Below, piece after piece: positions 62,813 through 64,000 of a DNA stretch of 64,000 nt. Position 1 is the first letter of the stretch. Every line of letters begins with the position of its first letter. Under the pieces are notes generated by a model. The model searched no databases. It had not been told where the DNA came from and was given only the letters and a program-made list of their open reading frames with translations. A program made the translations under genes and the position numbers. Origin of the DNA: Octopus sinensis (lineage: Eukaryota); contig NC_042998.1 of assembly GCF_006345805.1 (NCBI RefSeq), positions 35,650,001-35,714,000 of the forward strand, in the 5' to 3' direction.

Positions 62813-62958
62813 ATCGTATATGTTTATACTGAAAGGGCAAAAGTGTTTCCTAATGGAAGTACTTAAATAGAAGTACCATGAAAACATTTGCTAATTGTGC
62901 ATTACAACTTTTATATCTGTTCTCACTAATTGACTTTTTACTGGTTGATTGTAGAGCA

Positions 62959-63165
62959 TACAGTTCTATGTTTAAGAAATGAGGAATTATTTACATTATT
63001 TACATTTGACAGATATTTGTCCTCATTTCGGCTGATATACCCTCTAGCCTTCATCAGGTGTCTTGGGGAAATTTCAAACTTGGGTTCTCATGCCTAAGGC
63101 ATTTTTCGATCTTGTTGTTGTTGTTGTTATTATCATCATTATTATTATTATTATTATCATCATCA

Positions 63166-63209
<44 letters not shown>

Positions 63210-63515
63210 GTTATTATTATTATTGTTATTGTTATTATTATTATTATTATTACACCATATGCTTGTGGGCATATGGCGTAGTGGTTAAGAGCACGGGCTA
63301 CTAACCCCAAGATTCTGTGTTCAATTCCAGGCAGTGACCTGAATAATGATAATAATAATAATAATAATAATAATATCAAAAAATACCTTAGGAATGAGAA
63401 CCCAGGTTCATAATTTCCCCAAGACACCTGATGAAGGCTTGAGGGTAGATCAGCCAAAATGTGTTAACAACAAGCAAGATGAGGACAAATATCCATCAAA
63501 TGTAAATAATGTAAA
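62959..63515. mobile_element. Second head-to-head inverted dimer of the same element, with 13-bp TSD
   Basis: Minus copy 62959-63262, plus copy 63268-63515; TGATTGTAGAGCA at 62946-62958 and 63516-63528. Confidence 0.9.
63115..63251. repeat. Expanded (ATT)n tract, internal to the minus arm of the inverted dimer
   Basis: Direct reading; it explains the poly-N/L/I ORFs. Confidence 0.95.
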
Positions 63516-64000
63516 TGATTGTAGAGCAGATACACATAAGCAGCTTATACAGCTGATATAGTTTGAAGGTCACCTTTAAATTTGTTTTTTGTTTTACAAC
63601 CTATTTTAGATGTAATTAAATTAAATTTGACAAAGCATTTATTTTGCCACTACTTATCTTAATGCCAACAAAATCAGTAGGTATTACACATAAAAGTATA
63701 AAGCCTACTGGGTTCCGGGTTCAGTGTGTGACACCTTGGGTAAGTGTCTTCTACTGTAGCCTCAGGCCGACCAAAGCCTTATGAGTGGATTTGTGCATTA
63801 GCCACAAATACCTACAATAATATACAAATATATATATAGGCGACGAGCTGGCAGAAACGGGTGAAATGCTTAGCGGTATTTCGTCCCCTCTTTACGTTCT
63901 GAGTTCAAATTCCGCCGAGGTCAACTTTGCCTTTCATCCTTTCAGGGTCAATAAATTAAGTACCAGTTATGCACTGGGGTTGATATAATCGACTTAATCC

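What the first reader, a model, noticed from the sequence alone, without database searches (positions are those of the whole stretch)
62946..63528. tRNA-headed short retroelement inserted as a head-to-head inverted dimer inside one 13-bp TSD
Seen in sequence: TGATTGTAGAGCA (62946-62958), then a minus copy starting from its full 3' end (tacagttcta...), (ATT)n, a junction hairpin acaccatatgc-ttgtgg-gcatatggcgt, a plus copy (tRNA-like head with box A/B, (AAT)n, body), and TGATTGTAGAGCA again (63516-63528). One TSD brackets both copies, so they arrived in a single event. Both arms contain the same body, so this is not ordinary twin priming of one RNA. One arm has the complete 3' end; the other stops about 30 nt earlier, at ...aaataatgta. 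Established knowledge: Penelope-like elements (PLEs) show inverted terminal-repeat arrangements, partial tandems and a short optional 3' tail. Inference: this is a SINE-like, Pol III-headed element mobilised by PLE machinery, possibly with both nicked target strands priming reverse transcription. I do not know of a described equivalent, but could not search.
Basis: partly seen in the sequence, partly recalled or inferred. Interest (0 to 1): 0.88.

Follow-up and report, generated by a model that had tools for sequence, protein, structure and literature searches.

The report
Octopus mini-retroelement inserted as Penelope-style inverted pair
A roughly 270-base non-coding mobile element in an octopus genome is inserted as two head-to-head copies inside one target duplication, which is the known insertion signature of Penelope-like retrotransposons, so it is a new small example of a known behaviour and not a new mechanism.

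Summary
TGATTGTAGAGCA occurs at 62946-62958 and 63516-63528 and brackets two inverted copies of one element joined head-to-head at a palindrome. One arm carries 31 more bases at its 3' end.

It is not unique. The window holds a second dimer (14607-15108, 12-bp TSD) with the same one-sided tail and nearly the same junction. It also holds a tandem array (19583-20585, 14-bp TSD) with one head and five bodies. No simple monomer is present.

The element has Pol III A and B boxes, an (AAT)n tract, and a body with a hammerhead-ribozyme core of the minimal type described for Penelope-like elements (PLEs).

One TSD, an adjacent inverted copy, a palindromic junction, a 30-40-bp tail at one end only and partial tandems are published PLE hallmarks. 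A PLE protein was shown in vitro to nick and extend both target strands from two internal RNA start sites.

In the second dimer each arm holds element sequence that the other lacks. That favours two separately primed cDNAs over a single snap-back cDNA.

Its claim that nothing equivalent has been described is overstated. I rate this a new member of a known kind, of moderate interest.

The parts
62946..62958 (.). Left copy of the 13-bp target-site duplication TGATTGTAGAGCA
   Evidence: Exact direct repeat D6; sequence read.
62959..62989 (-). 31-nt 3' 'tail' of the minus arm (reverse complement TAATTCCTCATTTCTTAAACATAGAACTGTA). It is absent from the plus arm.
   Evidence: Alignment of all units. 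The same terminus ...TAGAACTGTA abuts the TSD in the second dimer.
62990..63113 (-). Body of the minus arm, with a 20-nt internal deletion relative to the plus arm. The hammerhead core CTGATGA-A-GGCTA...CAGCC-GAAA lies at 63026-63057.
   Evidence: blastn/nhmmer; hammerhead descriptor hit.
63114..63251 (-). Expanded (ATT)n/(GTT)n/(ATC)n tract. It replaces head positions ~20-81 of the minus arm.
63252..63279 (.). Head-to-head junction palindrome: acaccatatgc / loop ttgtgg / gcatatggcgt. The loop plus the adjacent gc is the reverse complement of head nt 1-8, so the minus arm reaches head nt 1. The plus arm starts at nt 9-11.
   Evidence: Sequence; comparison with the full head GCCCACAGGCATAT... 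of the second dimer.
63269..63341 (+). Pol III-type head of the plus arm. Box A is at 63274-63284, box B at 63318-63328, with a 33-nt spacer.
   Evidence: Box A/B scan: 0.03 matches expected per simulated window. No tRNA found by ARAGORN or Rfam.
63342..63376 (+). (AAT)n linker between head and body
   Evidence: It is present in every unit of the family.
63372..63515 (+). Body of the plus arm, ending at ...AAATAATGTAAA. A decayed hammerhead core lies at 63428-63459 (GAAA mutated to AAAA).
63516..63528 (.). Right copy of the TSD. Its first 5 nt, TGATT, resemble the element sequence that would have followed (TAATT).
   Evidence: microhomology statistics.
14607..15108 (.). Second inverted dimer of the same family. 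TSD ACTTACTTCTGT at 14607-14618 and 15097-15108. The minus arm (14619-14909) has the full tail and a decayed head. The plus arm (14910-15096) starts at head nt 1 and stops at ...AAATAATGT.
19569..20599 (-). Tandem array of the family: one 5'-truncated head plus five (AAT)n-body units (19583-20585). It is flanked by the 14-bp TSD ATATAAATATTAGT (20586-20599 and 19569-19582).
   Evidence: Units T3 and T4 are 100% identical, which indicates a later duplication.

Best explanation
**What it is.** A ~270-nt non-autonomous retroelement of an Octopus genome. It has three parts:
- a tRNA-derived Pol III promoter head with A and B boxes;
- an (AAT)n linker;
- a ~175-nt body with a Penelope-type minimal hammerhead core, followed about 85 nt and about 117 nt downstream by two alternative 3' ends.

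**How it moves (inferred).** It is copied in trans by the RT/GIY-YIG protein of a Penelope-like element.

**Events at 62946-63528.**
1. Shown: a 13-bp staggered break, recorded as the TSD.
2. Inferred: the 3'-OH of the top strand primed a cDNA from the distal start. This gave the minus arm with its 31-nt tail.
3. Inferred: the 3'-OH of the bottom strand primed a second cDNA from the proximal start. This gave the plus arm without a tail, helped by 4/5 nt of primer-RNA complementarity.
4. Shown: one arm reaches head nt 1, the presumed Pol III start.
5. Inferred: the two cDNA 3' ends were joined head-to-head. The terminal GC of the full-length cDNA paired with the GC 8 nt inside the other, which left the palindrome with its 6-nt loop.

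**Later changes.** Most of the head of the minus arm was lost, (ATT)n expanded, a 20-nt deletion occurred, and each arm decayed by 6-8% (transitions outnumber transversions).

**Tandem arrays.** Arrays of bodies behind one head arise from the same machinery, by template jumps or multimeric templates.
For: - One TSD around both arms at two independent loci (13 bp and 12 bp), plus a 14-bp TSD around the tandem array.
- The same one-sided tail in both dimers.
- Almost the same junction in both dimers (head nt 1 of one arm against nt ~10 of the other), but mirrored relative to the tail. The dimers are therefore not copies of one master dimer.
- In locus 2 the plus arm holds head nt 1-9, which the minus arm lacks. 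The minus arm holds the tail, which the plus arm lacks. Two cDNAs are therefore needed.
- All three family loci in the window are complex. None is a monomer.
- The hammerhead core CUGAUGA + bulged A + 5-6-bp helix II closed by G:C + GAAAC-GU matched three places in the window, all of them copies of this family. About 0.03 matches are expected per simulated window. One compensatory G:C to A:U change was seen. The bulge, G10.1-C11.1 and the ACGU palindrome are the features listed for PLE minimal hammerheads (PMC4209133).
- Published PLE architecture: an adjacent inverted copy, one TSD, a 31-bp or 30-40-bp tail at one end only, palindromic junctions and partial tandems (PMC3846280, PMC8557442).
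- A PLE protein nicks and extends both strands and starts RT at two internal sites that delimit the tail (PMC11167929).
- Octopus genomes carry recently active PLEs (PMC13282606).
- The window is from Octopus.
- The arms form a star-like pattern, each 92-96% identical to the consensus. This fits two arms that were near-identical at birth. Both arms of locus 1 share a private A in GTAAAT, where the other copies that retain this position have GTACAT or GCACAT.
Against: - No autonomous PLE with a matching terminus could be sought. No external copies were retrievable.
- Rfam finds no hammerhead in these copies.
- A canonical helix I and cleavage site are not evident. The minimal-hammerhead reading puts G at position 17.
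- Covariation is not significant with 7 related sequences.
- The TSDs (11-14 bp) are longer than the 8-10 bp reported for rotifer Penelope.
- The published in vitro RT start is not homologous to the target, whereas here the short end shows microhomology.
- The sample is only three loci in one window.
- The array's 3' end matches neither start site. It carries 32 nt of unexplained sequence.
Confidence: 0.62

Rival explanations
1. Snap-back (self-primed) synthesis. A single target-primed cDNA reached the RNA 5' end, folded back on its terminal GC and copied itself. The other target end then annealed by microhomology inside the copy, which truncated that arm.
For: The locus 1 junction is exactly what a fold-back of ...CCATATGCTTGTGGGC-3' on its own GC would give. 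In locus 1 the plus arm is a subset of the minus arm at both ends. There is microhomology at the truncated end. Self-priming was proposed for the palindromic junctions of Penelope (PMC3846280).
Against: In locus 2 the arm contiguous with head nt 1-9 is the arm without a tail, and the other arm has the tail. Neither arm can be a copy of the other. The same truncation point with two unrelated TSDs is more simply explained by a second RT start site (PMC11167929).
Confidence: 0.17
2. An ordinary LINE-dependent tRNA-SINE. Its dimers arise from a twin-priming-like accident in which two SINE RNAs are used at one staggered break.
For: It has a Pol III head. Variable 11-14-bp TSDs are typical of AP-endonuclease LINEs. 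LINEs are abundant and active in Octopus (PMC13282606), and many other tRNA-derived SINEs lie in the window.
Against: There is no poly(A) or simple-repeat 3' end. All three loci are complex. Two recurrent 3' ends lie ~31-33 nt apart, one per arm. The body has a hammerhead core. Tandem body arrays occur. No similarity to any other sequence in the window, including the possible (unconfirmed) LINE remnant at 48.8-50.4 kb, was found.
Confidence: 0.12
3. A DNA transposon or foldback/MITE whose arms are terminal inverted repeats.
For: Long inverted arms flanked by a direct repeat.
Against: The termini are not inverted copies of each other, because one end has 31 extra nt. TSD length varies from 11 to 14 bp. 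The Pol III heads sit at the centre. The same unit also occurs as a purely direct tandem array with its own TSD.
Confidence: 0.03
4. Two independent insertions that happen to be adjacent, or a later inverted duplication of one copy.
For: The arms differ by 10% and by indels.
Against: The direct repeat brackets both arms and no second TSD is present. An inverted duplication would invert the flanking repeat as well. The same arrangement and junction recur at 14.6 kb. Arm-to-arm divergence equals the sum of each arm's divergence from the consensus.
Confidence: 0.02

Closest known systems
Insertion architecture of endonuclease-positive Penelope-like elements (Penelope/Poseidon, Neptune, Naiad; rotifer Pen families)
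   Same: An inverted 5'-adjacent copy inside one TSD, a palindrome at the inverted junction, a 30-40-bp tail at only one end, partial tandems, and a hammerhead motif in the repeat (PMC3846280, PMC8557442, PMC4209133). Both target strands are extended from two RT start sites in vitro (PMC11167929).
   Different: There is no ORF and the whole unit is ~270 nt. Transcription is presumably by Pol III from a tRNA-derived head, not from a pLTR promoter. The TSDs are 11-14 bp, against 8-10 bp in rotifers. Microhomology is seen at the short start.
Schistosome SM-alpha / Sj-alpha SINE-like elements
   Same: [quoted passage not shown] Found both dispersed and in tandem repeats, with an upstream unit driving transcription (PMC6765202, PMC8490949).
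   Different: Different phylum. No sequence relationship was tested. Their hammerhead is canonical and active, whereas here only the core and helix II are evident. Inverted dimers with a one-sided tail are not described for them in the papers read.
Metazoan non-LTR retrozymes
   Same: Non-coding tandem units of ~170-400 nt, each with a type I hammerhead. They are AT-rich, have TSDs longer than 4 bp, and are proposed to depend on PLEs (PMC7229834; bioRxiv 10.64898/2026.07.22.740005).
   Different: Retrozymes are not described with a Pol III/tRNA head. Their hammerheads are mostly canonical. CircRNA intermediates could not be examined here.
L1 twin priming
   Same: An inversion inside a single TSD, with the second nicked strand used as a primer.
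   Different: Twin priming inverts a different, more 5' part of one RNA. Here both arms contain the same body, and each has a 3' end of its own.

Membership tests
PLE-type (Penelope-like) insertion / non-autonomous PLE derivative | An inverted copy adjacent at the 5' end, with the whole unit inside one TSD | tested here: met
   Locus 1 (13-bp TSD) and locus 2 (12-bp TSD).
PLE-type (Penelope-like) insertion / non-autonomous PLE derivative | An optional 30-40-bp 3' tail present at only one end | tested here: met
   A 31-33-nt extension on the minus arm only, in both dimers.
PLE-type (Penelope-like) insertion / non-autonomous PLE derivative | Palindrome at the inverted junction | tested here: met
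   11-nt stems with a 6-nt loop at 63252-63279. A degenerate mirrored equivalent lies at 14900-14926.
PLE-type (Penelope-like) insertion / non-autonomous PLE derivative | Partial or multiple head-to-tail tandems | tested here: met
   One head plus five body units inside a 14-bp TSD.
PLE-type (Penelope-like) insertion / non-autonomous PLE derivative | Minimal type I hammerhead: CUGANGA, a bulged nt before helix II, G10.1-C11.1, GAAA, palindromic 15.2-16.2, helix I and a cleavable H17 | tested here: inconclusive
   The core, bulge, helix II, G:C closure and GAAAC-GU are present and not expected by chance. Position 17 reads G, helix I is uncertain, and Rfam gives no hit.
PLE-type (Penelope-like) insertion / non-autonomous PLE derivative | Terminal sequence shared with an autonomous RT + GIY-YIG element of the same genome | not testable with these tools
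   No PLE was identified among the ten window ORFs screened against Pfam. The genome could not be searched by DNA.
tRNA-derived SINE (LINE-dependent) | Internal Pol III promoter: box A and box B at tRNA-like spacing | tested here: met
   TGGCGTAGTGG, 33 nt, then AGTTCGATTCC (plus2) or TGTTCAATTCC (plus1); 0.03 matches expected per window. There is no T4 terminator inside the 271-nt consensus.
tRNA-derived SINE (LINE-dependent) | Head recognisable as a tRNA | tested here: not met
   ARAGORN finds nothing, even at 80% of its thresholds. Rfam gives no tRNA hit at E<=1-5.
tRNA-derived SINE (LINE-dependent) | 3' end derived from a partner LINE, or an A-rich or simple-repeat tail; copies mostly simple monomers | tested here: not met
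   The 3' end ...TAGAACTGTA has no repeat or A-tail. None of the 3 loci is a monomer. A match to a LINE elsewhere in the genome could not be tested.
Metazoan non-LTR retrozyme | Tandem units of ~170-400 nt, each with a type I hammerhead, expressed as circRNA | tested here: inconclusive
   The units are 160-205 nt. Of the five array units, T2 has an intact core and T1 an intact core with A:U in place of G10.1:C11.1. T3 and T4 have a deleted helix II, and T5 has a mutated CUGAUGA box. RNA could not be examined.
L1-type twin priming | The two arms are different, essentially non-overlapping parts of one RNA | tested here: not met
   Both arms contain the same ~125-145-nt body.

The most novel reading that the evidence does not exclude
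This family would be the first tRNA-headed (Pol III) SINE shown to ride on Penelope-like machinery. Because the whole element is so short, its dimers would be complete natural records of one integration. They would show both primers, both RT start points 31-33 nt apart, the true RNA 5' end, and the way the two cDNAs are joined (terminal GC on an internal GC next to a CATATG palindrome). PLE integration intermediates could then be read genome-wide.
Probability: 0.3. Interest if true: 0.55.

Novelty: new member of a known kind. Interest (0 to 1): 0.4.

Why it matters
How Penelope-like elements integrate is still poorly understood. So far the evidence is one in vitro study plus descriptions of complex multi-kilobase insertions that assemblies often break.

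A ~270-nt passenger with a defined Pol III 5' end would give many small, fully assembled insertions. Primer use on both strands, the choice of RT start site, tail formation and cDNA joining could all be counted in them.

It would also widen the definition of a SINE to partners other than LINEs, and add cephalopods to the hosts of hammerhead-bearing non-autonomous elements.

For genome annotation, families of this kind are likely to sit among the many 'unclassified SINE' and 'unknown' repeats reported for Octopus.

Tried and rejected
**Retrieving more copies or the genome**
- I translated the element's open frame and searched the protein collection for ORFs called on other copies. Nothing was found.
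- Exact-pattern scans of metagenome contigs (two patterns) and viral contigs found no match.
- Looking up two window ORFs by identity to reach the source assembly returned 'not on record'.
- A homology search with the possible LINE-derived ORF (49440-49925) found nothing.
- A search with the Pif1/Helitron ORF identified the genus. It also gave three loci, 65 kb in all, two of them from O. sinensis. None holds a copy of the family.

**Empty site**
- The flanks of both dimers and of the array are unique in the window, so no paralogous empty site exists there.

**RNA and tRNA recognition**
- Rfam at permissive E-values found neither a hammerhead nor a tRNA.
- ARAGORN found nothing down to 80% of its thresholds. 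At 70% it gave one implausible fold.

**Hammerhead reconstruction**
- I tried a full canonical hammerhead with several placements of helix III and the cleavage site: GAAACGU|G, GAAACGUGUU|A and GAAACG...CGUC|A. None gives both a cleavable position 17 and a helix I. I therefore claim only the core and helix II.

**Other readings set aside**
- A master dimer transposing as a unit is rejected. The junction loop is mirrored relative to the tail in the two dimers.
- A Helitron or rolling-circle origin of the array is rejected, because the array has a 14-bp TSD.
- 'Both RT starts follow UGUA' is dropped, because the short ends of the two dimers differ by 3 nt.

Full report
**1. The observation**

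- TGATTGTAGAGCA occurs at 62946-62958 and again at 63516-63528.
- Directly inside the left copy, a minus-strand copy of a repeat begins with tacagttcta. Directly inside the right copy, a plus-strand copy ends with ...aaatgtaaataatgtaaa.
- The two copies are joined head-to-head at acaccatatgc-ttgtgg-gcatatggcgt (63252-63279).
- The bodies are 89.5% identical over 124 aligned bases, with one 20-nt indel.
- The minus arm has 31 nt (62959-62989) beyond the point where the plus arm stops.
- In the minus arm only the first ~19 nt of the head survive. The rest of its head is occupied by ~140 nt of (ATT)n-like repeat.

**2. The family within the window**

blastn and nhmmer with the element find three loci in the window and no others.

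*Locus 2 (14607-15108)* is a second inverted dimer.
- Its TSD is ACTTACTTCTGT, at 14607-14618 and 15097-15108.
- The minus arm ends with the same ...TATAGAACTGTA.
- The plus arm stops at ...AAATAATGT, within 3 nt of the stop in locus 1.
- The plus arm starts with the complete head, GCCCACAGGCATATTGGCATAGTGG.
- The minus arm's head is decayed. It resembles the head only weakly: 21 of 1000 shuffles score as high.

*The third locus* is a minus-strand tandem array (19583-20585). It has one 5'-truncated head followed by five (AAT)n-body units joined as ...TAGAACTG|AATAAT.... It is flanked by a 14-bp TSD, ATATAAATATTAGT. Units T3 and T4 are identical, so they are a later duplication. The other units differ by ~10%.

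All three loci are thus complex, each inside one TSD of 11-14 bp. None is a plain monomer.

**3. Anatomy of the unit**

*Head.* It is about 81 nt. Box A (TGGCGTAGTGG) and box B (AGTTCGATTCC in the best copy) lie 33 nt apart. About 0.03 such matches are expected per simulated window. The 271-nt consensus has no run of four T, so Pol III could read through it. ARAGORN and Rfam do not recognise a tRNA. Other SINE families in the window have similar heads.

*Linker.* An (AAT)n tract follows the head.

*Body.* It is about 175 nt and contains CCUGAUGA-A-GGCUG-(10 nt)-CAGCC-GAAAC-GU.
- A descriptor for this core (CUGANGA, 0-1 bulged nt, a helix II of at least 4 bp closed by G:C, GAAA) matches three places in the window. 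All three are copies of this family. A mean of 0.03 matches is expected per simulated window.
- On an alignment of seven copies, 89% of cells pair in helix II plus a candidate helix I (GACAC/GUGUU). Slid controls give 18-39%.
- There is one compensatory G:C to A:U change. With so few related sequences this is not significant.
- The bulged nucleotide between A9 and 10.1, the G10.1-C11.1 pair and the palindromic ACGU after GAA are the features that Cervera and de la Pena list for the minimal hammerheads of Penelope-like elements (PMC4209133).
- I could not place a cleavable position 17 together with a convincing helix I, and Rfam reports no hammerhead. I therefore claim a hammerhead-type core, not an active ribozyme.

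**4. Comparison with published PLE biology**

- Arkhipova et al. describe the typical Penelope insert as direct pLTRs plus an adjacent inverted pLTR inside one TSD. [quoted passage not shown]
- Craig et al. give the same picture for all EN+ PLEs: partial tandems, an inverted 5'-truncated copy, and a 30-40-bp tail often at only one end (PMC8557442).
- Frangieh et al. showed that a purified PLE protein nicks and extends both target strands. They also showed that reverse transcription starts at two internal RNA sites, and that the segment between them is the tail (PMC11167929).
- Non-autonomous hammerhead-bearing elements are known. Metazoan retrozymes are proposed to depend on PLEs (PMC7229834; bioRxiv 10.64898/2026.07.22.740005). 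Schistosome SINE-like elements combine a Pol III promoter with a hammerhead (PMC6765202, PMC8490949).
- Octopus vulgaris has recently active PLE families and a very large 'unclassified SINE' fraction (PMC13282606).
- The window is from Octopus. Its Pif1/Helitron remnant is most similar to proteins of O. sinensis and O. bimaculoides.

**5. Mechanism**

The dimers are not copies of a master dimer. In locus 1 the arm that reaches head nt 1 is the arm with the tail. In locus 2 it is the arm without the tail. The junction loop is ttgtgg in one and gcccacag in the other, so it is mirrored.

In locus 2 each arm contains element sequence that the other lacks: head nt 1-9 in one, the tail in the other. 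Neither arm can therefore have been copied from the other. This argues against a single snap-back cDNA and for two cDNAs, one primed from each nicked strand and each using a different start.

Locus 1 alone would fit either model. Its junction is what results if the terminal GC of a full-length cDNA (...CCATATGCTTGTGGGC-3') pairs with the GC 8 nt upstream, whether on itself or on a second identical cDNA.

At the short end, the target resembles the element sequence that would have followed. The match is 7/9 in locus 2 (empirical P about 0.002) and 4/5 in locus 1 (P about 0.025). This could reflect annealing of the primer to the RNA. It could also reflect the reported preference of the Penelope endonuclease for tail-like DNA (cited in PMC11167929). 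The comparison windows were chosen after seeing the data, so this is only a lead.

The divergences are star-like. Each arm is 92-96% identical to the consensus, and arm-to-arm distance is about the sum of the two. Transitions outnumber transversions in most comparisons with the consensus. Both arms of locus 1 share a private A (GTAAAT) where the other copies that retain this position have C (GTACAT or GCACAT). This fits one source for both arms.

**6. What could not be done**

No autonomous partner could be sought, no further copies could be fetched, and no empty site could be found. PLE dependence therefore rests on architecture and on the hammerhead core. A LINE partner remains possible; I give it about 0.12.

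**7. Verdict**

The arrangement is a miniature of a known PLE signature, not an undescribed mechanism.

What may be new is the combination of a Pol III/tRNA-derived head with a PLE-type body in a cephalopod, and the usefulness of such short, complete dimers for reading PLE integration. I rate it a new member of a known kind, with interest 0.4.

Noticed in passing
window 14607-15108: A second head-to-head inverted dimer of the same family inside a 12-bp TSD (ACTTACTTCTGT). It has the same one-sided tail. Its junction loop is mirrored relative to locus 1, and the head of its minus arm is heavily decayed.
   Followed up: yes
window 19569-20599 (minus strand): A tandem array of one truncated head plus five body units inside a 14-bp TSD (ATATAAATATTAGT). 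Units T3 and T4 are 100% identical apart from a 31-nt internal duplication. The 3' end carries 32 nt (GAATTGG...CCCATAAA) that match neither the family consensus nor anything else in the window.
   Followed up: partly
window 20611-20620: TACAGTTCTA, the exact reverse complement of the element's last 10 nt, lies 11 nt outside the array's TSD on the head side. It could be chance, a remnant of an older tail, or a tail-like target preferred by the endonuclease.
   Followed up: no
window 685-1047 (minus strand): An ORF with a Pif1 2B domain (Pfam E=3.5e-8), a Helitron helicase remnant. Its best relatives are uncharacterised proteins of Octopus sinensis and O. bimaculoides (68-74% identity), which identifies the genus of the window.
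   Followed up: partly
window 61266-61330 (+), 50797 (-), 19246 (-), 63840-64000 (+): Other SINE families of the window. The first three sites have perfect A boxes and near-perfect B boxes at 33-nt spacing. The one at 19246 has a head close to that of the family studied here but a different body. The copy at 63840-64000 was recognised by eye only and was not picked up by the box scan.
   Followed up: partly
window 48867-50390 (minus strand): Three consecutive ORFs whose sequence looks reverse-transcriptase-like by eye (for example GIFQGDNCPVMLF), possibly a decayed LINE. Pfam gave no significant hit, and a homology search with one of them found nothing.
   Followed up: partly
window 62585-62815: A long (CCA)n microsatellite with interspersed variants, about 130 bp upstream of the dimer.
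   Followed up: no
window 55000-59300 and 60430-60980: The ORF list shows highly repetitive overlapping reading frames on both strands (for example repeated MCHRHRCQTRLADGH... and KELGQFASTRPNA... units). This suggests tandemly repeated DNA of other families.
   Followed up: no
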